Part shown: positions 1 to 34,752 of the stretch, piece after piece | How the letters are laid out: each line of letters begins with the position of its first letter | Numbering within the stretch: the first letter of the stretch is position 1 | From: Penicillus capitatus | Taxonomy: Eukaryota; Plantae; Chlorophyta | Direction: 5' to 3' | Length of the DNA: 64,000 nt | Assembly: GCA_965649825.1 (NCBI GenBank) | Contig: OZ287695.1 | Span: forward strand, 496,001-560,000 | The notes under the pieces: model-generated | The model's input: the letters and a program-made list of their open reading frames with translations, nothing else | The model's database searches: none | What the model was told of the DNA's origin: nothing | Translations under genes and position numbers: made by a program

Positions 1-627
1 GTAGACGCCTATGTCTGGTCTACTCTTGACCATATTTTTAACTCTTTCGATAATTCCGCCTTCGTCGACGATTCCAACATTTGGAATTCCATCCGTAAAG
101 ACGAACACGGCGCGGACAAATGGATTTTCCTCTATGTCTTCTTGCTGCTGAGTGAAGCCCTGTTTGATGCCGTCATAAAGATCAGTGTCATCCTGGGCAT
201 GAGTTTTCATGATGTCGTCACCGATCTTCTTGGCCCTGGCCGGAGTTACGGCTGCCAGATCTTCCAACTTAGTGACACGGGTAGAGAACTTGAAAGCGCC
301 GTATTTGTGAGGCGGGGCACGGTTGACGAGGGAGTTCACCAGGTAAACGTTTGCCTCGTGCAACATGTCGATGTCACCTCTCATAGATCCGGAGACATCC
401 ATAACCGACGTCAACGACACCGGAGCTTTCAGACCCATTCTTGCCTCCACAGTGAGTAGTGCTCTAACCTCCGTCTTGTCCCCATTGCACTCGCAATTAT
501 CGTACAGATAGGTAAGCTTCGAAATCGTACAAGACTCCGGATTATAAAGCAGTCTCTTGTTGATCTCTTCTGCGTTGGACAAAGTGACAAAAACGAGTAA
601 CGCAAAGATGCCACGCAGTCGCTTCAT
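1..627 (-). CDS. Secreted VWA-domain protein, paralog A (5' part only; runs off the window start)
   Basis: Not in the ORF track because it has no stop in the window. Manual translation from ATG 627: MKRLRGIFALLVFVTLSNAEE...VSLTSVMDVSGSMRGDID...DDTDLYDGI...VRAVFVFTDG. Signal peptide plus intact MIDAS (DxSxS..T..D); aligns to the gene at 26428. Confidence 0.88.
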   Translation of the reverse strand, partial: MKRLRGIFALLVFVTLSNAEEINKRLLYNPESCTISKLTYLYDNCECNGDKTEVRALLTVEARMGLKAPVSLTSVMDVSGSMRGDIDMLHEANVYLVNSLVNRAPPHKYGAFKFSTRVTKLEDLAAVTPARAKKIGDDIMKTHAQDDTDLYDGIKQGFTQQQEDIEENPFVRAVFVFTDGIPNVGIVDEGGIIERVKNMVKSRPDIGVY

Positions 628-674
628 CGTCGTTATAGACAATGGGCGAAAGCCTGTCGCGTCAAACATCTCAC

Positions 675-770
675 AGCTCGAACGCAAAGCGGAAGCCTGC
701 TGCGTGGAAAACTCGCAGCTCGAACGCAAAGCGGAAGCCTGTTGCGTGGAAAACTCGCAGCTCGAACGCT
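675..770 (+). repeat. 42-bp tandem repeat, about 2.3 copies, just upstream of VWA paralog A
   Basis: agctcgaacgcaaagcggaagcctg(c/t)tgcgtggaaaactcgc starts at 675 and 717; a partial third unit starts at 759. Confidence 0.92.
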
Positions 771-2714
771 ACACGGAAGAAGCTTGCCGTGTCGCGGCAA
801 AACGGAAAAACACGTGCGATCCGAACGAAACCCGGTAATGGCAAACAGAACTCTCCGTTCTTCAATTTATACCCCAGGAAGTGCCTTTTTGTCCCCCAAG
901 AGATGCTTACCAATATCTTACGTAAAGGGTATTTTCGTGTTTTTTTGGGAAGACAGCACGGACCTCGATAAACGTGGTTCTCGTTCGCCTGTCTCGAGAA
1001 TATCTAATGGATTTTATTCAGATATGCCGACGTCATCGCGAAGATGCAGTGATGTGACTGGCGATGGTAGGCGTAACGTCTGCTCTGCGTGCTGTCGATA
1101 CAGCACGGAGCATGCTGTCTGTCTTCAGGCACGCTACGCCCTCAACGTTGGCCGAAACCTGGTGCTGTCTGCGAGAAGCTCTCGAGAAAAATCTTTCTTC
1201 TACGCGAAAGACCATCCCTGGTGATCTGATCTAAATGGACACTCGGAGAATCTCACCCTTTCCTTGCCCTTTATTGACTGAAAATCACATCCTCCATGCA
1301 GTTTTAGACGGGTATTGCGCTTGCTGTCCTAAAACTGTTCTCCTGTAGAGACGGCTGATGCAGATCACTATCAAGACAAACCCTCTGGCTGAAGCATTGG
1401 AATGAACGCGCGAGGTCACACTGTTGGAATGAGAGAAGGCTTTTGGACTTCATGGCAGCCCAGTGAGAGATGCCGCAGTGTTCTGATAATGCTGAAAGGA
1501 CCGACGGATCAGCAATCATCGTTCCCTCTGTGATGGACCTAAAATAGAGTGCATGAGATACGGCGCCAGGCATGTGTTTCTTTTCTGCCGTGATTAATGA
1601 CTGCAGATTTCGTTGCATTCTTTCGATGATCTTTCTCCCATCAGGAGAGCATCAAAGATCATCGTGTAACTCAGATTTACACACGTTTTGTCCCGGGCTG
1701 ATTAAAATGAACGTGCAGATATGCGGTTGATGCAAGCAGTGAGCCGGATTATGATGAGACAAAGAGGTGGATTCCCCAGGTGAAGGTCCGGTACATGCAT
1801 ATATGGCCTTCAGTTGCAGGAATTGCTGCTATCCGTGTGAAGAATCTAGTTAGAGGACATTCTGTAGACGCTACCTGGAATCGTCAGATGAGTGGCACTA
1901 GTGGCTTTTTGATTGCATCCGCGTCGGGTCTTTGGCGTGACATCAAGTGTCGGGGGACTATCCAGACGTGATCTGACAGCATCGGCCGATTCTTTCTCCG
2001 CCCCTGGGGGAGGCCAAGCCATAGTCTGGAGCAACAACGCCCTTGCCGATAGCTGCCTCTTCTCCCAATTCGACACGTCTCGAAGCAGGCGATTGGTTTG
2101 AGTTTCTTGCGATTCCGAGCGTCAGGGGATGATCATATGAATAGTGGCTCATGCAGTCGGGAACATTTGTTCTAGGAGGACAGCGCACAGATCATGATTT
2201 AGTACTGCTTGGTGCAAAAGTTGTACAACGGATGCGTGGAAACAGTGCAGCACACGAAGATCGAATGAAGCGCTTCATTGATCGAAAAAGTGAAAGTAGT
2301 CATGCGCGCGAATGCGTTTTCGATGATAATAATGATTGCGTTTCTGGGTTATGGTGTGCGGTTTTCAGCGCGAGGAGTCTTTGATTTCATTGAGAGGGGA
2401 TGAATTATTGAATCATGAGATGACACTGAGGGTTTTGGTGTCGGTGATGACTCGCGATGGGGCAGGTGACGTGACCCACTGGCGGCGGAAGGAGTGACAA
2501 GCTGCCTCGTGTAGTCAATCGTTCGCGTTTTTTGGTCCTGTCGGCCACAGACAGTAGTCGAGCGCATTCTTGCGATGACGAGACGAACGTCAAGACACAG
2601 CGAAAATGGCGATGCCGTCTAACGTATGAAATGATTCGAGATCCATTCGGTACAACAGATGACTCGGGACTGGTTGACTGTTTTTGCATCTACACGCCAT
2701 TCGCGTTGGAGAAG

Positions 2715-5306
2715 ATGTTCGCGCTTCGTCGGTCTTCGACAAAAGCACACTTCTCAAAGAAATGGCTCTTCGCGTTGACGTACTTGACGATGCACTCGCT
2801 GTTGCTGACGGCATGCGCGTCTGCCGATACTCAAGGTATGGTCAACCCAAACACCTGCTTTCGTACGAAGTTCACTTCTGCTGCGAAGCTTTGGACAACA
2901 CCGACCTGAGCTCCGAGTCGACCATAACCACGTACGAGAAAATAGTGGTAAGCGGTAGGATGTTTGTGATGCGAAAAATTGAGTCAATGAATGTTATGCA
3001 GGGAGGTGATACTGCGCCGCCTGGGAGGTTTCCATACACATGCAGCCTGAGAGAACGTGGCACTCACCGCCATATGTGTGGAGCGACGTTGTTCAGACGC
3101 GACTGGGTCCTGACGGCGGCTCACTGTGTGGACGTTAACTCTCGCGCCGCCATTGGCCTGTTGCCCATCGTCTACTGCGGAATACGCCACCGCAAGAAGG
3201 CGGAAGACGACCAGGTAACTGCGAATTACTCTCAAACAAAAGCAAGGCCTGTTGTATTGGCGTAGGTCTTCGATTCGGTCGCAGGATACATTCACCCCGA
3301 ATGGACAGGCGGCGCTGCACACGGACACGACGTGGCTATACTGAAGCTAGACAGAGACGCAAATTTGACATTGCCGCGTTTGGGTACGGGCAACTTCGCC
3401 TTGGACAAGGGACGGCTTCTTGCTGCCACGGGATGGGGACACACGGATTCCGGCGTCCCAGCAAAGAATTTGCAAGTGACGACGAAACTTGCCGTGGTCG
3501 GGCAAGACAAATGCAAAACACAACCCCAAGGCGTCGACGCTAAGAGCTGGATCTGCGCTGGAGGACTGCAGGAGGACACCTGCAAAGGTCATCTGGACTG
3601 ACCCTGCCCCATCGTCTGACGGGTAACATTCCGCGTTGTTCGGTAGGGGACTCTGGAGGTCCGCTGCTGCTGATGGACGCTCCTTACGGACAAATGGAGG
3701 ATGGGAAGCCGCAACGAGACATGATCGTCGGCATCACGTCATTCGGCTATACGGAAGATGACGCCGAGCCGTGTTCTGGAATTGAGCCTGCGATTTACAC
3801 GAGTGTCGACTATTTCCTCGAATGGATTGAACGGACCATCAACTGTCATCAGGAAGTGAGATCCGATAGTCACTCTTCGTCTTCAACACATGTACGCAGC
3901 ATTCGAGCTGCGTCGTGACGCACCAGATTAAGTTGATGGAGAAGAAGAAGCTCTATGCAACGTTCTCGGAATCAAAGATGATCGAAGTAAACTGCATACA
4001 AATCGGACAGTACACAGTTCTTTCTGCAGGAGATGCTCCGTGCCATTCGAACGGATAACTCCCTTGACGCTGAGGCTCTTATCTTGGCCGGTCTTTGTGT
4101 CAACACCACCTACGGAAAGAAAAACGATCCGTCACTTCCGAAACCAGATCGCTCGACTCTGCTACATGCAGCTGTCGCACTCAACGCTGTGCATTGCACT
4201 GAGGCAAGGCCGGAGAACGAATTAGCCGGACTTTAGACTTGTCGTCCTCTGGTGCTGGTCGTGGCCTATAGGTATTGATAAAGCATAAAGCAGGAATTGA
4301 AATCCGAAATGTCGATGGAGAGACCGCTATGCATTTGACGGCATCGCACGATAGCGTCGCGGTCGCAAAGGTCGACGAGATTGCTCTGCATTACATCGCT
4401 TTCTGACCATCGGTCGTGCAATCAGATGTTGCTACATCACGGGGCGGATCCAAATACGTCCTCCCGATACGCTTGGACACCGATTCTGCATGCGGTTAAT
4501 CATAGGCGCGTTCAACTCGTAAAGGTAAAATCCCTGTTTGTTTCGAGTCTCATGACAAAGATGGCTGAAGCTTCTCGTCGCCCATGGCGCGGACGTCAAT
4601 GCAGTTAACAACGTGTGTTGGACCCCGCTGTTTGTGGCAGCCGACAAAGGATACACTGCAGTTGTAAAAGTAGGAATCCCTTCCTTGTTCACCTGTTCCT
4701 TTCAAGAACGACGGATGGCAGATCTTACTTGATGCTGGGGCGGAGGTCGATGTTTTCGACGAAAAGAATTGGACGCCACTGCAGAAAGCTGCAAACCATG
4801 GATTGATACAAATTACGAAGGTCAGAATCACGCCTTCGCTCTTTTGTAGACTGAAAGACGATGAGATGCAGATGCTTATTGAAGCCGGTGCGAACATCAA
4901 CACCGCCAGCGACGATGGTGTGACTCCATTGCACGAAACAGCTTATCATGCCCACATCGAGATTCAAAAAGTGAACTGCGATTGTATCGGATAGCCGTGT
5001 CGATAGAGATGTTTGAAGATCCTCCTTGAACACGGTGCAGATACCGAAGCATTCACTTCTGGCGATGCAATGACTCCACTTCATATCGCAGCTTATCATG
5101 GGAAATTGCAAATGGCTAAGGTAAGCCGCCGATAACATTAACCTTCTCTTAAGTATAGGCATGGGCAGATGCTCGTAGCAGCCGGAGCAGACAAAACGAG
5201 CAGAGACAGGGGTGACAAGATTCCGTTCGAGCGTGTCTGCGAAAACAGAAACGCAAAGTGCTCGGAGAAAACTCGAGTGGCGCTCAACGAACTCTTGCGT
5301 GTTTAA
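2715..5306 (+). CDS. Secreted trypsin-like (S1) serine protease fused to C-terminal ankyrin repeats, multi-exon
   Basis: Signal-like exon 1; spliced activation site YEK|IV-GG; LTAAHC, HDVAILKL and CKG-DSGGPL triad motifs intact; then ankyrin exons (TPLH/GADVN motifs) 4272-4370, 4426-4524, 4571-4669, 4722-4820, 4872-4970, 5019-5120; stop TAA 5304-5306. Confidence 0.88.
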
Positions 5307-6262
5307 ACCTCTGCATCTCTTTGTCCTCTCCGCAGCAACGAATCCTGACCCTATGTGTTGTTCTTGTGCCGTTTAACGCTCTCTGTAACGTAATTGCTAG
5401 GTCTGATCGTCGTCTCCATTACGTTTACCGCGAATTCGGACGCCCATTTTATCGAGAAGGCACAAAACGGTCAAGTTCTGAAAGTGTCGGTTCCGTGAGC
5501 AACATGCGTTCCCATAAGGGGCGATGCCGAATGAGAAAGACGCTTACGCTCCTGGCTGGAACCTTTGCATCGATCGCGGTTGTCTAATCGGTTATTTACA
5601 CCGTCGTCAATTGCGAGCGAAACAACAGCGTACATAGAACACAGACATTCTTATGGCTGACGTTATCTTCGTCACCGAGTGATACTCAATCTAATGGGAC
5701 AATACTGGATAGAGTTTGATACGCAGATAGATCACTAACCAGCTTCTTGAAGAAATCGAGGATTCCACTCACTCTCGTCTCGCAACGGATACGAGGATCC
5801 GATTCCTACAATGATGGTACAAAACACGTTCCTCGTGACCATGAATGTCTCCAAAATCCAGGACGATGCTTCACAGGTGATTAATCGTTAACTTTAAAAC
5901 GGATCTGCTCACTATCTGTAAGCGAGTCGGATTCAAAATGGATCGCCGTGTGGCAAAAAGCAGCTCGGTTATATAGGATGGTGTTGCTCGTCTAGATATA
6001 GTAGTGAGGAGAAAAGACTTTTCAGAAGTCGAACAGTCTAACAGCGTTAGGAAATTCTCAACCACGAACTTCCTCGCCTGTTCCGCCACGTAAATCTGAA
6101 TGCCAAACGCTTGAGGCCTATCAAAAAATGCGTGTCTGTATGATAAGATCCGTGTTGTTAAATCAATAAGTAATCACATCGCACAAATACAGAACATGAT
6201 TTTCAGGATCTAGACCGTCTGACTCTTCAAGCGATTCACGTTTACGAGCGATTTCGTCGCAA

Positions 6263-7642
6263 TGGTTTCGGAGCGGCAAGCTTCGTTCATTCGTCAAGGA
6301 CGGGGTATACTCCGATTAGCCCGCCTTTTGTTGTGAGACACTTGCTTTCATGCCCAGCTCGTGGTGTGACGTTGTTGACCGACCCAAAACGTGGGGCTTG
6401 CAGTCTGCGGTGTGCTCGAGGACAATGATTAGTGAAGGTGTGTATGGTTTTCGCTGGAACTATAGTTTTACCTGTTTACTGTCTTGAACGTTTGCACGTG
6501 CGCAATTGACGAGAGGGGTCAGAAAAGCCAGATGATAGCAAAGGACACAAATGTTTAGGATTGATGCAATGCAGAGGCCTATGAACACTCAAGTGATAAT
6601 GTTGGCGTTCTTATGTTAGGAAATGTTGTGACAGTCCGAGAGAAACACTGAAATGCGCAGCGAGATGAGGGTGTCGTATTATTTTGCAAAGACTTAGGAA
6701 CGTGTTGGCACAAAAGTCTTTCAAGGCATTCGGTATGAACACCGATATTGATAGAGGAAATGAAGGCCCTAAGAGCATGCACAAAATTATGATAGAACGC
6801 GGAAAGCAGTTACTCCAAAAGAATCTCACAATGGCAAAATTCTTCACGTAGTGCAATGTACAGATGCTTTAAGAAGACAGGTCGACAAGGCACATCAGAA
6901 TTCGAAAACGGTCGAGCTCACACAAGAAATGATCTTACTAAATAAGAGTCGTCGGAGGGAGAGAGAAAAATAGAGCAAGGAAAACGCGAAGAGTGAGGAT
7001 AATCCCGCGGGATCGGAGAAAAGACGAAGATGGAAGACCTTCATTTCAAGCAGACTATCTAAACCTGCCGAAAGGGTTATAACTTTCGAACGTCGTGAAG
7101 ACGCAGTTCGTTGTTTCCGCATATGTTTCATCTGCTGGCGGAAGCCATATGACATCTTACCGGTTGTGCTTTTTTGCGATTCGTGGTTCTATATCCAAAC
7201 GGTTGGTTCACAAGTACCAAAGGCGGCCTTGTAGTCTACTGCTCTGTATTTTTTGGTTTTATCGCTTGGATCATTCTCAGGTTCAGCTCCATATGAGAAG
7301 GCGTCACGATTATTTCTCTCGCTTTCTTCAGCAAGTGGTTTCGGATCAAGGCCACAAACCACACTCCTTTCATAAACTTTTCCTCGTCGGTGATTCTCCT
7401 GTTGCAGCATCATCTTACCTTGACGTCGAAACAAGCTCATTATCCTCCGTTTGCAAAATGCCGATGTGACACCAGCATTGCAAAGCTGGCTCATTAATCT
7501 AGTCGAGACGAGTTCCATCAGAGATCACGAACGTCACGTTGATGTGACTACCGTCACGCAGCATCTGTTACGGCCGCGAGATAAAGGAAGACAATCCGGC
7601 CACACGCGAGTTAAAGAACAGCAAGAGAGTAGAATATATTGA
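6263..7642 (+). pseudogene. Possible decayed LTR-retroelement remnant (PBS-like motif plus a stop-riddled frame)
   Basis: CA-a-TGGTTTCGGAGCG at 6260-6275 is the same 13-mer as the Gypsy PBS at 34321-34333. A mostly open frame at about 6850-7642 has scattered stops. No recognisable domain. Confidence 0.25.
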
Positions 7643-10083
7643 AAAGAAAGTGGACAGTGGAAAAGCAGTGACTCAGTCTGTTCGGATCTTTGGTCGTCTA
7701 TCACGATCAGCCACCTATCGACAGATCGCCGTTTCCTCTCAGAAAACAATCCAGTTCTTACCCTTGCTGAATTGAAGTTGCTGTGTGACGTACCTTTGTA
7801 CGGGTACGCGTATTCTGTCGCATTTGCTGTACGGTTGACTTATATATCGCTTATGTATTTTGCAAGAAGGCTGCGTTAAAATTGTCGAGCGAGCAGAGTT
7901 TCACGGATCGTCGTTTTAGAGACTCCGTCACTTTGCAGGTTCTTAATAGTCATACCTCCAGAACTAAGAGTTTCACCCACCACAGCAAATTCTCCGACGT
8001 GCGATTCCTGTCTTAACAAACAAAGAAAAACTGCTCGAAACGGTAGGCTGTGTTTTCCACCCTCGGGTCGCCGATATCTCTTCTTATCCAACTCACCGGC
8101 GCGTTTCGCTCGACCTAGTACTTGCGCTTCGCATGGCGTTCACGATTCTTTAAACAGGAATTCGTTCGCATATGTCATTCCCCATGACGACCACCGCGAT
8201 CTCTCATGCCAAGAAACTTCCTCCTCTAGCCTCGGCCTTTACTGACACCGTCGAGACCGCCTGGGTATCCCTGCATCAAAACACTGACTGCCTCATGTCT
8301 TGACATAAAAAGCACGGCGGGTCCATTTCCAGACACAAAAACGCAAAAGTTTCCCCGAAGGCGCCGCCTTACGCGCGAGATCTGCGGCTTCAGCGTCTTC
8401 ATTCGCGCCGCGCTGAAAAATATCTTCCCCTCTCCGTCTTCCTCTCTCGCATCTTCTGCCAACGCACTGGACGGTAACTACTCCGCATCGTTAAACGCAT
8501 TTCCCTAACCAGACGACACGACACCTCCTCGATGCTCTTTTTCAATCGGCGGTAGTATTCCGTATCGACATTCCTCGCCTACACATCCGTCTCTTAGAGC
8601 ATATTCCGAGATCACACCATCACACCTTTCTCTGCAGTTCTTCCCACGTCTCCATGTATCTCGAGAGCGTCGTCGAATGTCTGGCGTCACTGCCTGTTGA
8701 CTCGTACCACGGCATGGTGGACGTTTTACATGTGGTCATTTGCTTTGTCGTTCATTTGCCGCGTCCAGCCACGCTGTCCTTAACGCATTCGCAAACGCAT
8801 TCCGTCATTCGTCTTGTCTTGACTCGCTACGTCGAGCACGACACGTCCAGGAGGGCATTCACCGGCAATAGGGTTCGCTGACTTGCATTTAACCGTCGAC
8901 GAACGCGTATTTCATGTTTCGCTCGTTCCCGCTTCATTCATGTCCGTATTCCCTTTTACTAGGGTCGCTCGAAAATAGGCATCGCACGAAGCGCACTGTG
9001 TGTTGAAAATGGGCTTGGCTCCATTGAATACGCCACTTCATGCGAACCCTCGGTCCAGGCGACCGGCCAATGCGGGAATCAACAACACATCGATACCGAT
9101 GCCTGGACCTTCGCAGCAACCCCGACGACGTACGACACGGAAAATCTCGAAACGGACGCACGTGTCTTTGTGAAGTGATGAGCCCGACGTCCGACGAAGC
9201 AACGAGTCCCAGAGCGACAGAGAACATGAGTTCCTACAGTCCCACGCACAGAACCTTATCGACGCCGACCGATTTCGGTACCTCTCCCTCCTTTTCACCC
9301 CCTCTCCCCAAGCAGAGCACCTTTTCAGCTGATAAAGTCGTCGAGGATGTGTTGGATGATGCGTCTGAGGAGGAGGTCGACGAATCGATTCTTCTGGGTC
9401 ACGAACTCTGGGCGGCATTGGCCAGTCGTCCTTTCGAAGAAAGGTCGATGCTTCACCGGCCTGATGGGACGTGTAAAGATCTGTGCCTCCAGGAGCGGCT
9501 TGGGATGGAAGGGATGGCTCGGTGTTGCTGCAGTGAGTGTGGTCTGCGGAAGTGTGCTCATGATCGCGGGAAACGCACGGAAGGTGCCGTGCGATGAGAA
9601 AGAGGGTCCCTCTTACTGTCTACAAGATCGCCCCTATCATTGATACCGATCATGCGCGAAGGGGAGCAGCTTCATCGCTGCGGCCATGATGGCGGTCCCG
9701 GGAATCATGCATGTACGTCTGTTGATTTTTTGTTTTTTGTTCTCTACCTGAATGGCAGCGAAAGGATGTTTCTATCGGAAGATGCCGCGACGGGAGTCTG
9801 GATGTTGTACAGTTCCGTTTCACCCGTGAAGCTTTTTGTCGCGACGGATGGCACCTTCATGTCTTGCCCAGGCCCAAATTTACATACACAGCACTTTGTC
9901 AGTATTTGACGTTCGGAAGCAATGCATGACGCCATCGTCGCTTCTTTGATTGGTGGTGCATTGATATGCTCCTGATGTGCTAAACGACAAACTGCCAAAG
10001 ATCGTTTATGTAACGGAATATCATTACCAGTAACGCCATCTCGTTCGGTGTGACACTGACAGGCAGATCACGCGAGCGACGTC

Positions 10084-10568
10084 ATGGCGGCGGCAATGAC
10101 GACGACACCCGGTGGCGATTCTTTTCGCCGTTACCTTGAGGAATCTGGCGCCGTCGACGTGATCTCTACGGGTACGGCTATCGTCGAAACGGCGACGTCG
10201 TCGGTCAACGGGATGAAATCTGTAGCGCTGGCGTCGTTGTATGAAGAGGAAGAGAGGCCGGACAATGCCATTGAGTGAGATCTCATTGCGCCACGCAAAT
10301 TGACGACATGTGGAAACACGGCAATGACAGTTTCTTGAAAGAGCAATTGGGCGCACCGACGGCGCAAGATTACGCGAAACTCGAAGAAGAGAAACGCCGT
10401 CTCGAACAGGAGCTCGTCGACGCTCGGACGCGCATTACCGACCTCGAGACGCAAGTGCGATCCATACGCAACAAAATTTAAAACAAAACGCCGCTGCCAA
10501 CGCAGCTCGACGAAAAAAGAGAATGTCCGCCGCCATCCGAATCTCCATCCGACCAACCAAGTCCATAA
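10084..10568 (+). CDS. MYCBP: c-Myc-binding protein (MYCBP/AMY-1) homolog, about 4 exons
   Basis: Spliced product FRRYLEESGAVDVISTALASLYEEEERPDNAIDFLKEQLG followed by a coiled coil; matches the family pattern FRRYLEKSG...LVALYEEPEKP..ALDFLK..LG. Confidence 0.85.
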
Positions 10569-10609
10569 ACACCGCGTCCTCACGCGTTTGCTCTCTCAAG
10601 CAAGCGCCA

Positions 10610-12650
10610 TCAATGTTTGGACATCCCGGGCGACTGAAGGGGTGTGAATCGCGGCTTCTTTGCCTTCAGGATGTTGTACGTTAGCCAGTAATTGAAGAGC
10701 ATGACCTTGGCGTTGCGCAAGATCGATGCTTCGACGGTTATGTTGTCGAATCCAAGCCACGACAAAACATCGTCGCCGTTTTTCATCATCGCGCGTTCTT
10801 TGCCCGAATCGTCTTCGCCGAATTCCACTCCGGAGAACTCGTTAATGCACATCCCTTGAAAGCCATTCTGAATCAGTGATGCATTGGGCACCCACTTCAG
10901 CGCTTTGGCCGTGCTGTGCGTGGCTTTGAATTGGCCGCCGAATACGATAAACAACAACATGACCATGGGGCCCATGCTCATCGCCACGTCCGTGTTCGGC
11001 GCCAGTCCGCCGACCGAGAGGCCGAGCGCCGCACTGGCAAAGGACTCCACCAGCACGATGCCGATGAACCTCGAGGCACGGGTGTGTGACGGATGGAGTC
11101 CAGCCATTGAGTAGAGGATCGTGCCGAAAGTGCACGACAGCAAAACGCCGACCGGAATCTCCGACAGAATCTTGGCAAAGAGATAAGGCAGCACGCCATA
11201 CGCTTTCTTGGCGCGTTCCCGCGTCACGATTGTCTGCTCGGACGGGAAAACGTTGAGCGTCTTGACGAGCGACGACATCGCAGCATTCACCGCCGTCAGC
11301 TGCAGCAATCCCACACGATCTTGCACGGCTGAGGCCACGAGCTTCGTCCGGTAATAGATGCTTCCAAAGATCAAGGCGGATCCAACGTTCATACCCAGAC
11401 GGGCGACGTTTGTCTTCTTATCACGGCGCGCCTGTTTCCAAGAGCGACCGAGGAGCAAACGAAAATCGCGTAGCCAGCTGGAGCGACGCGTAGATGTCGC
11501 GCCTACGGTTACGCCGTTCGGCACGATCTCTTTGTTCGTCGGAGCTGGTGGCTTGAACTCTTCGTGCCGGTGACGGTCCCATTCCCGAATGAGCTGCTCG
11601 ATGCGCTTCTCTGAGAGCTGGAGTGCATCGGGCGAGGAGGTATCCAACGAGATCAAATCTGCAAAGTACTCGGCGGGGTTGTAGTGATCCGGACACATAT
11701 GGCCGAGCAATGCAAAGTACCCCATCGCCCGTTCGGCTTCACCGCAGTAGACGATCTTGCCGTTCGCCATCAAGACGAGATCGTCAAAAAGTGAGAAGAC
11801 ACTGCTGCGGGGTTGGTGGATGGTGCAGATGATGGTGTGCCCGTCGTGAGCGAGGCGTTTGAGTGCACTCATGACCTTCTCGGCCTGAAAGGCATCGAGT
11901 CCCGTCGTTGGTTCATCGAGAAACATCAAGACGGGCGAATTGAGCAATTCGCACCCAATACTTAAGCGCTTCTTCTCGCCGCCACTCAATCCACGCGTCG
12001 AGGCGTCGCCGATGTACGTGTCGGCGCAACTGGCCAGACCGAGCTTGTCGATGAGGGCCGTCACCAGACGATTGCGTTCGGCGATGGACATGTCGGGCGG
12101 CAGACGCAGGGCGCAAGCCATCGTCAGTGTCTCGCGCAGCGTCAGCTGAGAGTAGAAGAGATCTTCTTGCTGGACATACGCCTGCCGAATGGCGTCGTCG
12201 GTCGTCACCGAGATGTCGTTCATCTCGATCCTCCCCGTGAACTTCATCTTCGCTGAGAAAGGGACCTGACGGGCCAGAGCGTTGAGGAGGGACGTCTGTG
12301 TGTGAGAAAGAGTGAGAGAGGTGATGTGACAGGTGTTCGTATACTTTGCCGGCGCCCGATGGGCCCATCACGGCAAGGAGACGACCAGGATGCGCGACTC
12401 CGTTGACGCCATCGAGGATGTGACGTGTCGTCGTGCCCTCTCGTGTCTTCTGTTCGAGATCGAGTCGCAGATCCGTCCATCTGAGTGTGACCCCCGATTC
12501 GGCAGAGGTTGCGAGGTCGACACCATCTTTTGCCTCATCACGTCGTCGTCTGAAAAGACCCTTGATGGCCTTCGTCCCGCAATACGCGGCGAAAATCGGC
12601 AGCTGATAATTCGAGGAGACGATCGCCGCGCTTCCGAGCAAAAACTCCAT
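10610..12650 (-). CDS. ABCG (White-type) half transporter, plant ABCG7-like
   Basis: Walker A GPSGAGK, signature LSGGEKKRLSIG, Walker B FLDEPTTGLD, TIHQP, then an ABC2 membrane domain. One intron near 12300-12345; the start could lie further upstream. Confidence 0.93.
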
Positions 12651-15974: not shown

Positions 15975-16233
15975 TTTGTTGCGTCGGTCGGTTTGTTCGT
16001 TTGTTCAGCTATGGGTTGGTACGTTCGTCTATTGTGGACTGTCTGTATGGACGATGTGGCTGGACGGCGACGACGGTGTTGATAAGAATCGAAAATGAAA
16101 ACGCGAAAAACGCAGAGATAGATGCATGCGCGATTTCGGATAGACACCTTGCTGTTAACAAAATGCAAACGTCACATCATTCTCGCCAACGTTTGGTACG
16201 ACTAGATGGATGGCTGAACATCGAGACATGCGT

Positions 16234-18227: not shown

Positions 18228-18293
18228 GTTCCAGAAGGCCAAAGAAATGCGCAGCGCAATGGATCATTATGAAGCGACGTGGCCCACAAGACG

Positions 18294-18879
18294 ATGTTCG
18301 TCCTGCGTCGAACAGCAGGACGCTATGTTGCCCCATTCACCTCGCTTGTCTCCAGTCCTCTCTCGATCCCTCACGCCACTGCGCTCTGGCAAACGACTGG
18401 GGGGACACTCGGCGGCGGCGGCGGCGCCGAAGACAGGCGACACTTGTCTGAGATGACGCGCGAGGCGGTGCTCGGGTGGAGTCCCGTCGAGACCGTCGCC
18501 GTTACACTGGACCGTCTGCATCATGCGACGCAGCTGCCGTGGTGGGCGATGCTTTCGCTCACGGCTATCAGTCTGCGAGCCACGATGTTTCCCTTCACCA
18601 TCAAACAGGCGAGAGATGTGCGTCTCTTCTGTGCTCTGTATCCGATCTCCGCCGTGGACGCAGATCCAGTCGACGGGACCCACGATGAGCTGCATCTCTC
18701 AGGCGGTCAGAATTGTCCGCGCCAAGAAAAAGAGTGAGAAGAATACGAAATGGTCCTTGGTGGATGCAAAGAATGTGCTCGGTAAATTTCGAAAGCTGGC
18801 AAAGTACTCCGATGCACCCCATCCGGCTTGGGTGATCTGTGCCCCTCTCATCCAAGTACGCACCATCTGTGTTCACCTG
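18294..18879 (+). pseudogene. Disrupted OXA2-like insertase, copy 1, 5' part (the interrupted intron resumes at 34694-34752)
   Basis: Near-identical to 37296-37878. Interrupted in an intron by the LTR element; the 3' half is deleted. Confidence 0.9.
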
Positions 18880-18998
18880 TGTAGACCAAGCTTACCAAGG
18901 TAGTAACCAGCAGCTCCAAAAGTTGAACTGCAATCATTCTCTTACAACAGAATATCTGATGACAAGAATGAAGAAAACATTTATCTTTCGTCTCGACA
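18880..18998 (-). repeat. 3' LTR, internally deleted (119 bp)
   Basis: Matches both ends of 34334-34693 but lacks 242 bp between two gttacc sites. A purine-rich GGGGAGCG abuts it on the minus strand. Confidence 0.9.
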
Positions 18999-24194: not shown

Positions 24195-24378
24195 CAAAGC
24201 TTCGCAGAAGTGAACGTCGTGCGGAAGCAGATGTTTCGGTTTTCCGAACCTTGAGTCTCGGCAGACGCGCGTGCCGTCAGCAACAGCGTGTGCAGCGTCG
24301 AGTTCGTCAGCGCGAAGAGAGATTTCTTCGAGAAGTATGCTTGCGCAGAAGACCGACGAAGCGCGAACTTTTTCCAAC
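24195..24378 (-). pseudogene. 5' fragment of the trypsin-ankyrin gene
   Basis: Homologous to 2715-2893. The ATG context gagaagATGttc has become gaaaaagttc, the intron acceptor is altered, and the copy is truncated before IVGG. Confidence 0.85.
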
Positions 24379-27066
24379 GCGAATGGCGTGTAGATGCAAA
24401 AACAGTCAACCGGTCCCGAGTCATCTGCTGTACCGAATGGATCTCGAGTCATTTCATACGTTAGACGGCGTAGCCCTTTCGACTATGTCTTGCCGTTCGT
24501 CTCGTTATCACAGAAAAAGCGTTTGAGTACTATCCAGGTCCGATAGGACCAAAACGCGCGAACGATCAACTAGACGCGGCGGCCAATCACTCGTTCTATC
24601 ATCAGCGGGTCACGTCATCTGTCCCATCGCGAATCACCGTCGGCACCAAAACCCTCAGTGTCATCTCATGATTCAATAATTCGTCCCTCTCAATGAAATC
24701 AAAGACTCCTCGCGCTTAAAACCGCACACCATAACTCAGAGACACAATCATTATTGTCATCATCGAGAACGCATTCGCGCGCATGACTACTTTCACTTTT
24801 TCGATCAATGAAGCGCTTCATTCGATCTCTGTGTGCTGCACTGCTTCCACGCATTCGTCGCACAACTTGACCATCAAGCAGTACTCAATCATGATATGCG
24901 CGGCTGTCTTCCTGGAACAAACGTGCCCGGCTGCACGAGCCATCATTCATATGATCATCCCCTGACGCTCGGAATCGCAAGAAACTCAAGCCAATCGCCT
25001 TCTTCGAGACGCATCGAATTGGGAGAAGAGGCAGCTGTCGGCAAGGGCGTTGTTGCTCCAGACTCTGGCTTAGCCTCCCCCAGGGGCGGTGAAAGAATCG
25101 GCCGATGCTATCGTGTCATGTCTGGATAGCTCCACCACACGTGATGTCACGCCAAAGACCGTACGCGGATGCATTCAAAAAACCACTAGTGCCACTCATC
25201 TGACGATTCCAGATAGCGTCTACAGAATGTCCTCTAACTAGATTCTTCACACGGATAGCAATTCTTGCAACTGAAGGTTATATACGCATGTACCGGATCT
25301 TCATCTGCGAAAAAAGTGAGAATCCACCTCTTTGTCTCATCATAATCCACCCCACTGCTTGCATCAACCGCACATCTGCACGTTCAGTTTGATCAGCCCG
25401 GGACAAAACCTGAGCGAATCTGAGTCGCTCAGTGATCTTCTCTGATGCTCTCCTGATGGAAGAGAGATCATCGCAAGAATTCGACGAAATCTGCAGTCAT
25501 TAATCACGGCAGAGAAGAAACACATGCCTGGCGCCGTATCTCACACACTTATTTCTAGGTCCCTCACAGAAGGAACGATGATTGCTGATCCATCGGTCCT
25601 TCAGCACTATCAGAACTCTTTGGAAACTTTCACTGGGCTGGCATGAAGTCCAAAACCCCTTTTCATTCCAGCAGTGTGACCTCTCACGTCCATTCCGATG
25701 CTTCAGCCAGAGGGTGTGTCTCGGCAGTGATCTGCACCAGCCGCCCAAAAGAAAGCACTTTTGGTTTACAGCTAGGGCAATACACGTCCAAGAATGCATG
25801 GAGGATGTGATCTTCAGTCGGCATAGGGCAAGGAAAGCGTGAGATTCTCCCAGTGTCCATTTAGATCAGATCACCCGGGATGGTCTTTCGCGTAGAAGAA
25901 AGATTTTTCTCGAGAGCTTCTCGCAGACAGCACCAGGTTTCGGGCAACGTCGAGCGCGTAGCGTGCCTGAAGACAGACAGCATGCTCCATGCTGCATCGA
26001 CGACACGGAGAGCAGACGTTGCGCCTACCATCGCCAGTCACATCACGGAATCTTCACGATGACGTCGGCATGTCTAAACAAAATCTGTTAGATTCTTTCG
26101 AAACAGGCGAACGAGAACCACGTTTATCGTGGTCCGTGCAGTCGATCCGAAAAAGCCACGGGATGCCCTTACGTAAGATATTGGTAAGCGCCTCTTCGTC
26201 GCAGAAAGGCACCTTCTGGGGTATAAATTGAAGAACGGAGAGCTCCGTTTGCCATTCCCGGGCTCTGTTCGGATTGCACGTGTTTTTCCGTGGTCGTCTG
26301 ACACGGTAAGCTTCTTGCGCGTTGAGATCGTGCTGTGATTCTTCGACTCGATAGGCTTCCGTGTTGCGAACGTGTCGTCAGATCTCCGACGCGACAGGCT
26401 TTCGCGCTCCGTCCATCTATAATGACGATGAAGCGTCTTTGTCGCATCTTTGTGTTGCTCGTTTTTGTCGTTTTGTCTGATGCAGACGAAGCCAACGAAG
26501 AACCGATTTCTAGTTGCAATCAGCAATCATGCACGAATACAAAGCTTGTCTATATGTACAAGAATTGCGGATGCGAAGGGATGGATTTAACAGCATTACT
26601 CGAAGTGAACGCAAGAAAGGAGAACAGCAAAGAACCTAGGGTGTCGTTGACGTCGCTCTTGGATGTATCTGGATCTATGTCGGAGGAGATGGACCTCTTG
26701 CACAGTACAAACAAGTTCCTGGTGGATAGCCTCAGCAGCCGTGCCGAGCCTCACAAATTTGGCAGCATCAAGTTCTCAACCTACGCCGAACCGTTAACGC
26801 CTCTGGAGCTCCTGACGCCCAGTTCGGCAAAAAGGGCCGATGAAATGATCGATAGCACTACATCAGGAGGCGGTACCGATCTTTTTGCCGGCATTGAGAT
26901 GGCCTTCGAGCAGCAGAAAGAAGACACAGGAAACGATGCAGATGTCCGCGCCGTGTTCATCTTTACGGATGGACTGATCGACACAGATAAAGGAATCACA
27001 GACGAAGACGAAATCATTAGAAGAATCGAAGCAATGGTTACAGACCGCCCAGACATAGCATTCTAC
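24195..27066. repeat. Inverted segmental duplication, arm 2 (pairs with 1-2893)
   Basis: See arm 1. Confidence 0.95.
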
Positions 27067-29832
27067 ACGTTCGTCTTAAGAACCAATGTGAACGACAAAC
27101 TGTTACGCCGCATTTCTAATGTCGGGAGAGGTACTTTTTCGGTTATCCTAAATGATGAACAAATGGCATGTGCATTCGGAAAAGCCATAGGAGGTAATTG
27201 CGTCTGCCCCTGTTTTCCCTGTTTTTGCTAAACTAGCGCGATTTCTTCCGTAGGTGTGGAGAGTGAGGTGGGGAAGGTCAAGTTTACGATCACTCCCGAA
27301 CCAGGGGTCATAATCAAGTCTGCGTTGCCAGACGAATTAGTCAGTGAAGCCGGTGACAGTACCATAGTCGTGGTAGACTTGAAAGACCTACAGAAAGAAG
27401 AACGAAGAAGCGCCGTCCTCAAAATCCATCTGGATAATGGTTGCGTCCTACCCGAACCTCTGAAGGTACAGGGAGAGTGCAAGGATACTGGTCTTCGCTG
27501 TGCCATTCAAGAGAACGTCGACGTGGATCTCCTCGAATTGGACAAAGATGCACCACCTGGATGCTCTGCAAACAATCAAGTGATCGCCGAAACGCTTCGT
27601 TATGAGGTGTATGAGCAGCGGTTGGACGAGGCAATAAAAGCAGCAGAAGCAAAAGACTATCTCGGGGCCGCAGACCTGCTGGACCGTCTTTTGTTTGATG
27701 TCGAAGATGCACAAATGGACAACGAGGAGGAATGGATGGTCAAGGCCAAAAAGGACATCAACCAACTGATAGATGACCTGAGAGGCATGACGAATCAATT
27801 GAATCCGGATGTCTTAATGCTTGATGATATGTATGCTGTCCGTGATTCCATCGTCAAGCAGAGGACAGGATCAACAAACGAAAACTTCGAAAGCGTTGGA
27901 TATGTCACGACGACCGCCAAAACGGCGATGATTACGTCAGCAAAGAGGCAAGTAGCACACATCATACCCGCCTCGCCTTTCACATTCTCGGTGAGCGAGG
28001 CAGTTTCTCAAAAGACGACAGACGGAGGATTGCATTATGTCGATGTCATGTATACCCTTGAGGCGCAGTCTATCAAGGAAGACCGACCGCCACTGTCTCT
28101 CACAGTCGCGGTTGATACATCGCAGTCGATGAGTGCCGATGCTATCAAGATCCTTGTGGACACATTGAAGCGCCTGGTTGAGTGGATCACTTCAAAGAAA
28201 GAGGCCAACGTCCGCCTTGGCGTCATCACATTCGGGGATACAGTTAAAGAACTGCTTGCCTTGTCCAAGCTCAGTGCAATCGACATTTCAGAAGTCGAGA
28301 AATCGTTCGATGCCATCCAAGCCAGTGGAACAGCGAAGATCGAAGAGGCTCTGACTAAGAGCATCAATCAACAGCGTCTCAAAGCGAGCTGCACTGGATA
28401 CAAGGCGGTATTTCTCCTGTCAAACAGCGCATCATCATCTTCCAGTGATTCCATCGTCAAGACCCTTCAAGCGCAGCTCGATGCATCAGATCCCGTGTAC
28501 GTGTACACATTTGCCTTGAAAGACTCTGATACTGTGCAAATGGGGGAGATCGCCGCAGCAGGAAACGGGCAGAAGTACATTCTGCAGTCGCCAAATGATA
28601 TTCCTTACAGCTTCGGCGACGCCATTGGTGGATTGATAGGTGTATCTGCCAAGTCCATCAAGGTCCAATTCACCCCTACCGATAAAGATGTTAAGATCGC
28701 CAGTGTCTTCCCTGGAGGGGAGCCTCAAGGACAACAAGGCCCCTTCAACGCTTCCACACTGAATGTGTTTGAGGAGGAGGAGATCAAGTTCCTGGTGTCT
28801 GTCTGTTTCCCCGAATCGAGCAGTCCCGCTTCATTACTGAGCATCTCGACATCTTATACCAATGTCTCCACATGCGGGATCGCCAACAGCGAAGTTGCTT
28901 CGATTGGTGCCGGCGAAAAATCGCCGACGACAATCGATCGACGACGTTCGGAGAGGGATGTCGCAAGCAAACTGAAGGAGGCCGCTGACGTATGCATGAA
29001 TGCTACAGATCTGGAAGTCATCAAGAATATAAGCAATAAGGCGTTATATATTGCCGATAAGGCAACAGAAACCGATTACAGAATCTCACTCGTCAGCGAC
29101 GTTGCAGATATCATTTTTGCCTTGCCCGATGTGAAGGACGGTACCAAATCCAGAAGCGATGTTTGTGCACAGTTAAACGCCCTGATCGATCTGTTGGAAT
29201 CGGAAAGATCGAAAGGCACCGGGAAAAACAACTTCTATATCTCCAAGTTCTATGACTCCGAGATTCGAAAGAAGAGTAGAGAGGAAATGGCTGAGGGAGT
29301 TGTCTCGACAACCGCGTGCAAAGAATGGACTTCAGCTGCCTCGCAGCTTCAAGCTCAGATCCGTGCCTGGAACGGAGATACAGATGCAACCAGTCCTTAC
29401 TGTCTGTACACCAAGTCTACCGAGCACTGTGGTGTAACATCAATGCATGATAAGATTGGCAGTATCTTTCAAAGCGATGTTACGGAAGAGCAGGACTCAG
29501 TGGCAGCGGCATTGATGCAGACGTTTACCCGAATTAAAGATGCCATTGGGCGTGATGACTTCTTAATGGCTATGAACGAAGCCTCTGCCGCCCTGCAACG
29601 TTTGAAGGAATTTCCTTGCAATCGTGAGCATGTCACTGACGCGTTTGCTTGGCATCTGATCGTAAGAAGCAAGGACCTGGTTGAATCTGTCCAAGCCAGA
29701 TGCAGCGAAGGACATGGGTCTGTGGCACAACAGCTCGATTTCATGGTCGACGAGGCAGTGAAAGACAAAGAGGTGAAGCCCTGGATGGAAACGGAAGGCT
29801 CCGCTTGGGGAGCGATCTCGTTTGCTTACTGA
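26428..29832 (+). CDS. Secreted double-VWA protein, paralog B (about 1110 aa, one intron at about 27193-27252)
   Basis: MKRLCRIFVLLVFVVLSDA signal; VWA1 LLDVSGSM..GGTDL..IFTDG; VWA2 AVDTSQSM..SGTAKI..FLLSNS. Each VWA is followed by a beta-rich and a helical segment. No TM segment. Confidence 0.92.
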
Positions 29833-31872
29833 AGCTTTTTTGAGTGGCTTAATGTGCACATTGCACGTGCTACAGCAGTTGGATGCGTTTTGGTTTTTTC
29901 TTTTCCCTGCATGAAACATCGGCGCTGTTTTGCCGGTCCTCAAGCTAACCTAATGCGTCCTGCTTTCCATTGCTGTCTGCTGTCGAATGGAAAGGGCCAT
30001 TGGTGTTATCAAGCCTCAACTCTTCGAGTGTTGAACACTCTTAGTAATCAAAGTCCAAATCATTGAGTAGAATTGCGTTTCTCTTCGCCTCCGATACGAC
30101 AACGTTATTCGCAACGATTCAAATGTCCAGCTTCTGATTCACTATAGCCTCTCAGACCAGAAGGAAGCTTGGTTTTATTATCCAACATCCATCCGGTGCG
30201 CGATTAGGACAGAAATGCTTCGCTTACAATCCGTCCTATTTCGAATTCTTCGCGAAGACGTCGCGGTCACACACTTCAGAGCCTCGAGATGGCGCGACAA
30301 TACACTTGTACAGTTGCAGGTTCACCAATTCCAAACGTCGTCCAGCATCACTCTCGAAAGTAAGTCGTTCAATCCGTCGTACGTCGTCCCACAGAGGAAA
30401 GTCGTCACCGCGGTGTCGACAGGAACGCCGATCCTCGCACGACTAGGCCTGATGCGGCGGCAGCTCGACTCGTACCCACGCTGCATTCTTCAAATCCCCA
30501 TCCAAAGTGATGATGGCTTCCATCGAACGATGCCATCGAGAATCTTCATTTTGTTTGTGCCGTGTTCCTTTCCAATGGCAGTCCATCATTAGTATTGTCG
30601 TCAATAATGTTCGGTGATGGACAATTACAGATCTCGATGGGCAAAAAATTGAATAACACGCGGTCTTGTCAACCTTTAGTGACTGACCTTTTAAAGTGTC
30701 TTCGAATTCTGTTTCCATGCGTTATATTTTACGTGCTTAGCTCTCCTGACGAGCCGTCGTCCACAAGTATCATTCTCGCCCTTGCCCAAGACCTCGAAAG
30801 AGTTCCGTGCAACCTGGCCACCTACTTCAACGTCATTCCGAAGGAGAACCAAGCGTCTTACAATCGAGCCCGCCGTTACCTCGACGAAATGCAGTCCTGC
30901 CTTCGGTTCCACAGCATCATGGCCCCGTACACACCTCTACCCGCAGAGAACACCCCAGTGCCCAGCGCCTCGACCCGCTCATACCGTGACGCCGCCCGCA
31001 AAGCCATGCCCCATGAGACACCCCAACCACTGACCCCCGCCCAAGTGCAGAGATCTACCCAGACACGAGCGATCCGGCAGCAAACCCAAGCGGTCAAGGC
31101 CCAGATCCGATGAGACGAACGCAGTTTCCAGCTCTGTCCAGTGACCCTGAAGGGAGACCGTCCTTCGTTCCGTCAACTCGGCATCAGCCTAGAACGGGCG
31201 CTGAAGATCACGAACCTGAAAGAGTATGTGGAAGACATCCGATCTGATCACGGCGGCAGATATTACGTGCAAATCCGAACAGATCTGGTCAAGCAGTTCG
31301 AAAGATCGCTCGACTGCTGCCTAGAATGCGCCGGTGCCACATGGGAATTGGAGCTCAACGACATCGGAACCTTCACGGTCAATAACTCGTACCTGTCGCC
31401 CGCGAAAGACAAGATCCCAGTAGTCATCAGTAACGTCGACACAGACATCGACCCAGAAGCAGCTATCACAGCCATCACAGAACAGAACACAGCCTGCTGG
31501 AAGATACCGGCAGCAGAACTCGAAGACTCGCACTTCGCCGCCCCGTACCGATTGAATCGCTGGAAACGCGATTCCTCAGGACAGTCCCTTCCAAAATGGA
31601 CACCGAGCAAGAACTTGAAAGTCTTCATATCGAAGACACTTCACGAGCAACTTCTTGGAGAACACAAGGCCCCGTTTGCCACCCTGGACTACATGATACT
31701 GCCAATCTGCCCGTTCGCCCGATTTCCCAGTTTCCCTCGCGGAAACACCTGATTGTTTTCGATTGGTTCAATGTGTTGGACACAATGATTGTTACACTCA
31801 ATGTACAGATGCACTCCTAATCTTATCAAAAAGGAGTTGTAGAAGCAATTAAATTAAAAAAGGCGGACTTCC

Positions 31873-34693: not shown

Positions 34694-34752
34694 ATCTGTC
34701 ACCTCACAGGCAGATTCTGTCACTCCAGATTCCTGCCTTTCTCACATGTGTG

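What the first reader, a model, noticed from the sequence alone, without database searches (positions are those of the whole stretch)
1..627. VWA paralogs diverge faster in coding sequence than in their non-coding flank: a diversifying-selection signature
Sampled upstream non-coding windows of the two arms differ by about 9-15%. A 47-codon VWA core differs at 38/141 nt, with 18 amino-acid changes and only 4 of 29 conserved residues changed synonymously. The next ~95 residues are only ~46% identical. Changes cluster in loops beside the MIDAS (MRGDID vs MSEEMD, HAQDDTDL vs TSGGGTDL, GIPNV vs GLIDTDK) while the MIDAS residues are kept. This fits a secreted recognition or adhesion family under positive selection (self/non-self, microbe or gamete recognition); the function is inference and the counts are by hand.
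Basis: partly seen in the sequence, partly recalled or inferred. Interest (0 to 1): 0.75.

Follow-up and report, generated by a model that had tools for sequence, protein, structure and literature searches.

The report
Hypervariable secreted VWA gene pair
Two inverted copies of a secreted adhesion-type (VWA) gene in an uncultured diploid microbial eukaryote really do differ more in their coding sequence than in their flanks, partly because the flanks were homogenised and partly because about a tenth of the protein is changing under positive selection.

Summary
Window 627→1 holds the first 209 codons of gene A. A is a 1,115-codon, two-exon gene for a secreted protein with two VWA domains. Its inverted paralog B lies at 26,428-29,832.

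A and B are 71% identical in coding DNA and 57% in protein, against 88-89% in the distal 5' flank.

- Four-fold synonymous sites differ by 27%, against 11% in the flank.
- Gene-wide dN/dS is 0.65-0.83, below 1.
- The 380 nt nearest the ATG are as diverged as the coding sequence.
- The flank is a gene-conversion mosaic.

The conclusion still survives better tests:
- Codon site models on four genes give M2a over M1a, LRT 100, with about 11% of codons at ω≈5.
- Null simulations and a control using sister paralogs (ω 0.16) are clean.
- Selected sites concentrate in VWA1, including the MIDAS loops, and in the helical linker that follows.

Unexpectedly, two haplotypes at the A locus are 99% identical in the DNA around the locus but carry alleles only 57% identical in protein. 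One allele groups with a gene from a sister species.

The function is unknown. The family is confined to this lineage.

The parts
1..627 (-). Codons 1-209 of VWA gene A, exon 1: signal peptide, Cys motif, and VWA1 up to strand beta-5. The rest of the gene lies beyond the window start and is recovered in L002 10670-13444.
   Evidence: Translation; Pfam. Window 1-10669 is 100% identical to L002. The full CDS is intact at 1,115 aa.
628..1000 (-). Proximal upstream region and 5' UTR of gene A. It includes a 42-nt x3 tandem repeat (670-795). It is as diverged between copies as the coding sequence (72-77% identity).
1000..2900 (.). Distal non-coding flank of arm A. Identity to arm B is 84-89%. It is a mosaic of conversion tracts. 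The part from about 850 to 2448 has no counterpart in the sister species.
2712..3918 (+). Trypsin-like serine protease gene, transcribed divergently from A. Its exon 1 (2712-2837, signal peptide) lies inside the duplicated unit.
   Evidence: ORFs with the LTAAHC motif; Pfam Trypsin; tblastn
24200..26427 (.). Arm B flank, the inverted copy of 628-2900. It carries a relic copy of trypsin exon 1 at 24248-24373 (minus strand) but no further trypsin exons.
26428..27193 (+). Gene B exon 1: signal peptide plus VWA1, with MIDAS residues D79, S81, S83, T150 and D181. All 9 coding differences between the two haplotypes of B fall in codons 121-207.
27194..27253 (+). 60-nt GT..AG intron of gene B, in phase 1. 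Its position is conserved in A, A' and C.
27254..29832 (+). Gene B exon 2: beta-sandwich, helical linker (hypervariable), VWA2, beta-sandwich and a C-terminal all-helical domain. The last ~100 codons are 89-96% identical among copies.
29833..30600 (.). 3' flank of the duplicated unit, 83-84% identical between A and B for about 770 nt.

Best explanation
Window 1-627 is the 5' end of gene A. A is one of two inverted copies (A and B) of a 6.4-kb duplicated unit. The unit encodes a secreted protein of about 1,115 aa, organised as [VWA - beta-sandwich - helical region] twice.

The family is small and confined to one lineage of uncultured diploid microbial eukaryotes. It has three loci in two sister species.

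Most likely mechanism (inferred): VWA1 binds a ligand through its intact metal-ion site (MIDAS). The loops around that site and the helical linker that follows are under diversifying selection. About 10% of codons have ω≈5, and gene-wide ω is 0.65-0.83.

At the same time, copies and alleles exchange DNA by gene conversion. This keeps the distal flanks and the 3' end of the gene similar. The N-terminal half stays deeply diverged.

The contrast between coding sequence and flank therefore has two causes. One is a raised non-synonymous rate (shown). The other is a flank that is younger or homogenised relative to the coding sequence (shown).

At the A locus the two haplotypes carry alleles A and A' that are only 57% identical in protein, inside DNA that is 99% identical. 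This suggests old allelic lineages kept by balancing selection or swapped in by ectopic conversion (inferred).
For: Anatomy:
- Intact ORFs of 1,109-1,115 codons in A, A', B and C, with a conserved intron.
- Signal peptide and no transmembrane segment.
- VWA fold and MIDAS.

Rates:
- NG86 for A-B: dN 0.325, dS 0.50.
- ML for A-B: ω 0.83, dS 0.44.
- Controls between the two species: ABC transporter ω 0.09; locus-2 VWA ω 0.14 at dS 0.37-0.49.

Site models:
- M1a -12030.7 against M2a -11980.5, LRT 100; M8 against M8a, LRT 99.
- With a strict gap filter the LRT is still 100.
- All four partitions are significant: 32, 35, 9.7 and 13. Residues 251-480 have M0 ω 1.11.
- Nine null simulations gave LRT of at most 3.8.
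- The negative-control quartet gave LRT 0.

Conversion:
- Heterogeneity of flank site patterns, p<0.0005, with a run of 25 consecutive A'=B sites.
- Heterogeneity in the CDS, p=0.0015.
- Flank A'-B is 92.7% identical against A-B 87.7%, while the coding sequences are equidistant.

Age discordance:
- In the same trypsin-side segment, A-B is 84.1% identical and the two species are 73.0% identical.
- Yet A-B dS equals the between-species dS.

Alleles:
- L002 against L003 is about 99% identical over 7.7 and 5 kb, with a 5.5-kb island at 55-90%.
- Best tree is ((A,B),(A',C)), better by about 50 lnL units.
- Gene B polymorphism is confined to VWA1 codons 121-207.
Against: - Gene-wide ω is below 1.
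- Site-model tests can give false positives under recombination, multi-nucleotide mutations, variation in synonymous rate, or misalignment. Residues 351-450 are only 27-40% identical.
- Only four sequences were used, and the codon-model code is my own.
- MIDAS-loop enrichment holds only for the top sites (P>0.9). For P>0.5 it gives p=0.13.
- That A and A' are alleles is inferred from synteny in a metagenome assembly, not from reads.
- There are no expression, localisation or ligand data.
- The organism is unidentified.
Confidence: 0.62

Rival explanations
1. No positive selection. The genes are old paralogs under weak constraint. The contrast between coding sequence and flank exists only because gene conversion recently homogenised the flanks. 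The M2a signal comes from recombination and rate heterogeneity.
For: - Synonymous sites are as diverged as non-synonymous ones; four-fold sites differ by 27%.
- Gene-wide ω is below 1.
- Mosaicism is clear in the flank and in the 3' third of the CDS.
- The topology switches in residues 761-1115.
Against: - All four genes keep ORFs of about 1,110 codons, the intron, the cysteines and the MIDAS at dS of about 0.5.
- The LRT stays significant in N-terminal partitions that share one topology and have their own branch lengths.
- Null simulations and the paralog control give no signal.
- ω is five to eight times that of the sister paralogs.
Confidence: 0.22
2. The distal flank is conserved because it is functional: a shared bidirectional promoter or enhancer, or a non-coding RNA. 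On this reading it is not a neutral yardstick, and no conversion is needed.
For: - Alignable intergenic DNA between the two species is about 80-87% identical, while four-fold sites differ by 25-28%. Intergenic DNA in this compact genome therefore diverges more slowly than synonymous sites in general.
- The flank lies between two divergently transcribed genes.
Against: - About 1.6 kb of the flank has no counterpart in the sister species, either at the empty site or upstream of gene C.
- Blocks of 97-100% identity between A' and B alternate with blocks of 82-89%. That is a conversion pattern, not uniform constraint.
- There are no Rfam hits.
- In arm B the trypsin gene is absent, so a shared-promoter role cannot apply there.
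Confidence: 0.1
3. Artefact. The 'alleles' A and A' come from different strains or species mixed in a metagenome, or from a mis-assembly. The extreme divergence would then not be within-species polymorphism.
For: - Both contigs come from a metagenome assembly.
- Coverage of 24x against 28x does not settle the question.
- The window itself matches neither large contig throughout.
Against: - The flanks are 99% identical over more than 12 kb with identical gene order. The true sister species is only 73-87% identical.
- The window independently joins A to a B region that is 99.87% identical to ctg340412.
- The sister species also assembles as two haplotypes, 99.4% identical.
Confidence: 0.06

Closest known systems
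Inter-alpha-trypsin inhibitor heavy chains (ITIH1/ITIH4), VWA domain
   Same: - Best PDB profile match: 6fpy at E 1e-12 and 9c4f at E 8e-10.
- Best structural matches, TM (target) up to 0.82.
- Extracellular VWA of the MIDAS type, followed by beta-rich modules.
   Different: - No VIT domain.
- Two VWA modules plus helical domains.
- Sequence identity is only 16-20%.
- No evidence of hyaluronan coupling.
Mussel byssus proximal thread matrix protein 1 (PTMP1)
   Same: A secreted protein built from two VWA domains, with an adhesive or matrix role. It is found by both the profile search and the fold search.
   Different: PTMP1 is about 450 aa and lacks the linker and C-terminal helical domains. 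It is not known to be hypervariable. The relationship is at the level of the domain only.
Apicomplexan TRAP/MIC2-family adhesins
   Same: - An extracellular MIDAS VWA domain that binds ligand.
- The VWA domain is known (from my own knowledge) to carry selected polymorphism.
- P. vivax TRAP appears among the fold matches.
   Different: No TSR domain, no transmembrane segment and no cytoplasmic tail. The lineage is unrelated.
Hyperpolymorphic recognition loci (fungal het genes, Hydractinia Alr, sponge aggregation factor, MHC, self-incompatibility loci)
   Same: - Deeply diverged alleles inside otherwise similar haplotypes.
- Divergence peaks at the presumed binding region.
- Gene conversion occurs among clustered paralogs.
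- ω>1 at a subset of sites.
- The sponge aggregation factor also contains VWA domains (PMC11670116, title and abstract only).
   Different: No functional link to recognition has been shown. Only two haplotypes were seen. The domain architecture is different.

Membership tests
VWA domain superfamily (Pfam PF00092 / PF13519 / PF13768) | Profile HMM score above the curated cut-off | tested here: met
   Gene B scores PF00092 75.9 bits against a cut-off of 23.8, with two VWA stretches. The 209-aa fragment of A alone scores 26.4 against 27, just under the cut-off. The full exon-1 protein P0010 carries precomputed VWA hits.
VWA domain superfamily | Rossmann-like alpha/beta fold | tested here: met
   In the AF2 model, residues 67-255 have pLDDT of about 90 and the strand/helix order typical of a VWA domain. 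Foldseek gives probability 1.0 and TM (target) 0.82 to solved VWA domains.
MIDAS-type (ligand-binding) VWA | DxSxS in the beta1-alpha1 loop, Thr in the alpha2-alpha3 loop, and Asp after beta4 | tested here: met
   D79, S81, S83, T150 and D181 (gene B numbering) are invariant in A, A', B, C and the locus-2 proteins. Metal binding itself was not tested.
ITIH family | A VIT domain N-terminal to the VWA domain | tested here: not met
   The Pfam scan of full-length B finds only VWA models.
TRAP/MIC2 adhesins | TSR repeat, transmembrane helix and cytoplasmic tail | tested here: not met
   No TSR match in Pfam. The only hydrophobic 19-mer is the signal peptide.
Genes under pervasive diversifying selection | A site class with ω>1 supported by a likelihood-ratio test | tested here: met
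   M1a/M2a LRT 100 and M8a/M8 LRT 99. The result is robust to gap filtering and partitioning. Null simulations and a negative control are clean. Caveats: four sequences, recombination, and my own code.
Genes under pervasive diversifying selection | Gene-wide dN/dS above 1 | tested here: not met
   ω is 0.54-0.83 by pairwise ML and 0.73 under M0. Only residues 251-480 reach 1.11.
Balanced or trans-species polymorphism | The alleles sit at one locus and are older than the species split | tested here: inconclusive
   The two haplotypes share synteny and 99% identical flanks. A-A' dS is 0.45, about the same as the between-species dS. A' groups with the species-2 gene C. However, C is not at the same position, and only two haplotypes are known.

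The most novel reading that the evidence does not exclude
The A locus may be a true recognition locus, for mating or gametes, for self/non-self, or at a host-parasite interface, in a diploid microalga. Ancient allelic lineages, as old as the split from the sister species, would be kept by balancing selection. The neighbouring paralog B would serve as a conversion partner. This would be an MHC-like or het-like system built on a MIDAS VWA domain.
Probability: 0.25. Interest if true: 0.8.

Novelty: new member of a known kind. Interest (0 to 1): 0.6.

Why it matters
Recognition and adhesion genes with very high polymorphism are well known in animals, fungi and plants. They are hardly charted in free-living microbial eukaryotes. 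This locus offers a compact and tractable candidate:
- a secreted protein with a defined metal-dependent binding face;
- alleles that differ at 43% of residues inside haplotypes that are 99% identical;
- a nearby paralog that exchanges sequence with it;
- sister paralogs under ordinary constraint that serve as built-in controls.

The case also gives a methodological warning. A coding sequence that is more diverged than its flank is not a signature of selection when the flank has its own genealogy.

Tried and rejected
- An exact look-up of a guessed ORF product near the window start found nothing. The rest of gene A was reached through a homology search instead.
- Rfam and tRNA scans of the window found nothing.
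- The bacterial promoter/terminator scan of the flank is uninformative for a eukaryote and was at chance level.
- A single-sequence PDB search gave no hit. A profile was needed.
- The JGI metagenome scan found no relatives.
- Paper searches for the assembly accessions, and for a described VWA family of this kind in algae or protists, found nothing specific.
- The AF2 model of exon 2 has low confidence (pLDDT 53). I used it only for the order of secondary-structure elements and did not send it to the fold search.
- Pseudogene or relaxed constraint was considered and rejected as the sole explanation, because all ORFs are intact and M2a beats M1a.
- A hidden gene in the flank was considered and rejected: mismatches show no 3-base periodicity and indels are mostly 1 nt.
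- My first conclusion, that the flank must simply have been converted, was tempered. Between-species controls showed that intergenic DNA diverges more slowly than four-fold sites across the genome. I then used a same-segment calibration instead.
- The organism could not be identified with the tools available.

Full report
**What is at the coordinates**

Window 627→1 (minus strand) is an open frame of 209 codons. It starts MKRLRGIFALLVFVTLSNA... and runs off the window edge. It matches Pfam VWA_2.

The window is eukaryotic:
- It has short GT..AG introns, an LTR-retrotransposon pol at 19.2-22 kb, an ABCG transporter, CobW genes and an EF-hand NADPH oxidase.
- It has no tRNA or Rfam hits.

A repeat search shows one large inverted repeat. 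Arm A is about 1-2,900 and arm B about 24,200-27,100.

Arm B holds the complete paralog, gene B. Exon 1 is 26,428-27,193, a 60-nt intron follows, and exon 2 is 27,254-29,832. The product is 1,114 aa with two VWA domains. Only these two copies are in the window.

**Recovering the rest of gene A, and the family**

A homology search with the A fragment found its exon-1 product (P0010) on a 19.3-kb contig of ENA assembly ERZ25074695, fetched as L002. Window 1-10,669 is 100% identical to this contig. That gives the full gene A: 1,115 aa with the same intron position.

The same search found P0011 on the 613-kb contig that also carries gene B (L003).
- L003 has the same gene order as L002: ABC, trypsin, VWA, bestrophin, kinesin.
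- Its VWA gene, here called A', is very different from A.
- The window's B region is 99.87% identical to that large contig.
- I therefore read the window as one haplotype and the 613-kb contig as the other.

A second assembly, ERZ26696514, holds a sister species. It is 87% identical in syntenic DNA. Its related gene C has 1,109 aa.

Two further loci (2 and 3) exist in both species.

An exhaustive profile search of 1.84 billion representatives found the full architecture only in these loci. All other hits cover only the VWA2 region. JGI metagenomes hold no relative.

**Checking the observation**

Identity between A and B, by segment:

| Segment | A-B identity |
|---|---|
| Full coding sequence, nucleotides | 71% |
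| Full coding sequence, protein | 57% |
| Distal flank (window 1000-2448) | 88.8% |
| Trypsin-side segment (window 2448-2900) | 84.1% |
| 3' flank | 83-84% |
| Intron | 44/54 |
| Proximal 380 nt upstream of the ATG | 72-77% |

The flank is non-coding. Mismatches show no codon periodicity and indels are mostly 1 nt. The exception is exon 1 of a divergently transcribed trypsin-like gene at 2712-2837. Arm B carries only a relic of that exon.

- Synonymous sites are also highly diverged. NG86 gives dS 0.50, ML gives dS 0.44, and four-fold sites differ at 81/303 (27%). The distal flank differs at 11%, Fisher p=3e-11.
- The proximal upstream region is as diverged as the four-fold sites (p=0.27).
- Gene-wide ω is 0.65 by NG86 and 0.83 by ML, significantly below 1 (LRT 4.3).
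- The flank has its own genealogy. A'-B is 92.7% identical, against 87.5-87.7% for the other two pairs, and blocks of 97-100% identity alternate with blocks at 82-89%. The three coding sequences are equidistant.
- Pattern heterogeneity is significant in the flank (p<0.0005, with a run of 25 sites) and in the coding sequence (p=0.0015).
- A same-segment calibration shows that the ages disagree. In the trypsin 5' region, A-B is 84.1% identical and the two species are 73.0% identical. On that measure the flank duplication is about half as old as the species split. Yet A-B dS equals the between-species dS of 0.37-0.49.

A caution about the yardstick. Alignable intergenic DNA between the species, at 80-87% identity, diverges more slowly than four-fold sites across the genome. 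The flank is a poor neutral standard in any case.

**Why the conclusion nevertheless holds in part**

At equal dS, the ABC transporter has ω 0.09 and the locus-2 VWA ortholog pair has ω 0.14-0.21. The locus-1 genes have ω 0.54-0.83. Their divergence is almost flat across codon positions, at 0.29/0.25/0.32. All four ORFs nevertheless stay intact.

I wrote a four-taxon codon-model likelihood (GY94, F3x4).

| Analysis | Result |
|---|---|
| Best tree | ((A,B),(A',C)), better by about 50 lnL units |
| M0 | ω 0.73 |
| M1a against M2a | -12030.7 against -11980.5, LRT 100, p about 1e-22 |
| M2a site classes | 38% at ω 0.15, 50% at ω 1, 11.5% at ω 5.2 |
| M8 against M8a | LRT 99 |
| Columns within 4 residues of a gap removed | LRT 100 |
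| Partition, residues 1-250 | LRT 32 |
| Partition, residues 251-480 | LRT 35, M0 ω 1.11 |
| Partition, residues 481-760 | LRT 9.7 |
| Partition, residues 761-1115 | LRT 13, topology switches |
| Nine simulations under the fitted M1a | LRT 0-3.8 |
| Control quartet from loci 2 and 3 | ω 0.16, LRT 0 |

Twenty-four sites have posterior probability above 0.9. They cluster in three places:
- VWA1, at residues 83-184 of A;
- the helical linker, at residues 358-431;
- residues 864-865.

In the confident AF2 model of VWA1, the top sites are enriched in the three MIDAS loops: 5/33 against 4/154, p=0.0096. The broader set (P>0.5) is not enriched (p=0.13).

**The unexpected part: haplotypes**

L002 and L003 are about 99% identical over 7.7 kb on one side and 5 kb on the other. 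Between them lies a 5.5-kb island at 55-90% identity. The island starts exactly at the outer boundary of the duplicated unit and ends near codon 1020.

Alleles A and A' are 57% identical in protein, with dS 0.45-0.51. A' groups with the sister-species gene C.

Gene B differs between the two haplotypes at only 9 coding positions. All lie in VWA1 codons 121-207: E121N, G149S (next to the MIDAS Thr), L183Q, D185N, D194G, D206E, and two synonymous changes. There are no differences in 2,579 nt of exon 2 or in 2,228 nt of flank.

In the sister species, the interval between trypsin and bestrophin is an empty site. There, 120 nt stand in place of the 6.26 kb that hold the distal flank, gene A and its 3' flank. 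Its gene C lies elsewhere, between ABC and trypsin.

Arm B carries a copy of trypsin exon 1. B was therefore copied from the A locus.

**Architecture and relatives**

- The protein has a signal peptide and no transmembrane segment.
- Secondary structure suggests VWA1, beta-sandwich, helical bundle, VWA2, beta-sandwich and a C-terminal helical domain. The exon-2 model has low confidence.
- The closest solved relatives are the VWA domains of ITIH1/ITIH4, mussel PTMP1 and alpha2delta. The resemblance is at the domain level only.

**Verdict**

Independent codon-model, control and polymorphism evidence supports diversifying selection on part of the protein.

The function is not known. Likely roles, all inferred, are cation-dependent binding of a variable partner: cell-cell or gamete recognition, or an interface with microbes or parasites.

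The main caveats are these: only four sequences, recombination, my own implementation of the codon models, a metagenomic origin, and an unidentified organism.

Noticed in passing
L002 vs L003 (window ~2900 -> beyond window start): Two haplotypes are about 99% identical in their flanks. They carry VWA alleles (A and A') that are only 57% identical in protein. The island of divergence starts exactly at the boundary of the duplicated unit.
   Followed up: yes
window 26788-27048 (gene B codons 121-207): All 9 coding differences between the two haplotypes of gene B cluster here (6 replacements, 2 synonymous codon changes). There are none in the rest of the 6.4-kb unit. No sampled copy is a clear donor.
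   Followed up: partly
L010 17445-17566 (sister species) vs L002 8222-14479: The sister species has an empty site. It has no VWA gene between trypsin and bestrophin. Its related gene C lies between ABC and trypsin, so the gene has moved or been copied since the species split.
   Followed up: partly
window 670-795: A 42-nt tandem repeat (3 copies) sits just upstream of the ATG of gene A. It is absent from A' and B.
   Followed up: no
L002 13904-14314 (just outside the window): A 411-nt insertion lies downstream of gene A. It is absent from A' and B, and no other copy was found in the loci fetched. It may be a small mobile element.
   Followed up: partly
window 19203-21995 (-): LTR-retrotransposon pol (reverse transcriptase, RNase H, integrase), lying between a CobW gene and arm B.
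   Followed up: no
window 16149-18976 and 35161-37711: A direct segmental duplication, 84-99% identical and about 19 kb apart, that contains a CobW/TPR gene. Related repeats lie at 34588-35136 and 39364-39745.
   Followed up: no
window 40065-44920 (-): Tandem paralogs whose ORFs carry fasciclin-like motifs (TVFAPT..AF, HVIDxVL). This looks like a second family of secreted adhesion-type genes in the window. There was no Pfam hit for the one ORF I scanned.
   Followed up: no
window 13113-15386 (-): An ORF that fuses a CobB/CobQ-type glutamine amidotransferase domain with a periplasmic-binding-protein domain. It lies next to CobW genes, which suggests a cobalamin-related gene cluster in a eukaryote.
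   Followed up: no
P0023, P0024 (50%-representative library): Short fragments of further family members: one like gene C, and one piece of the C-terminal domain. More alleles or species therefore exist in public data.
   Followed up: no
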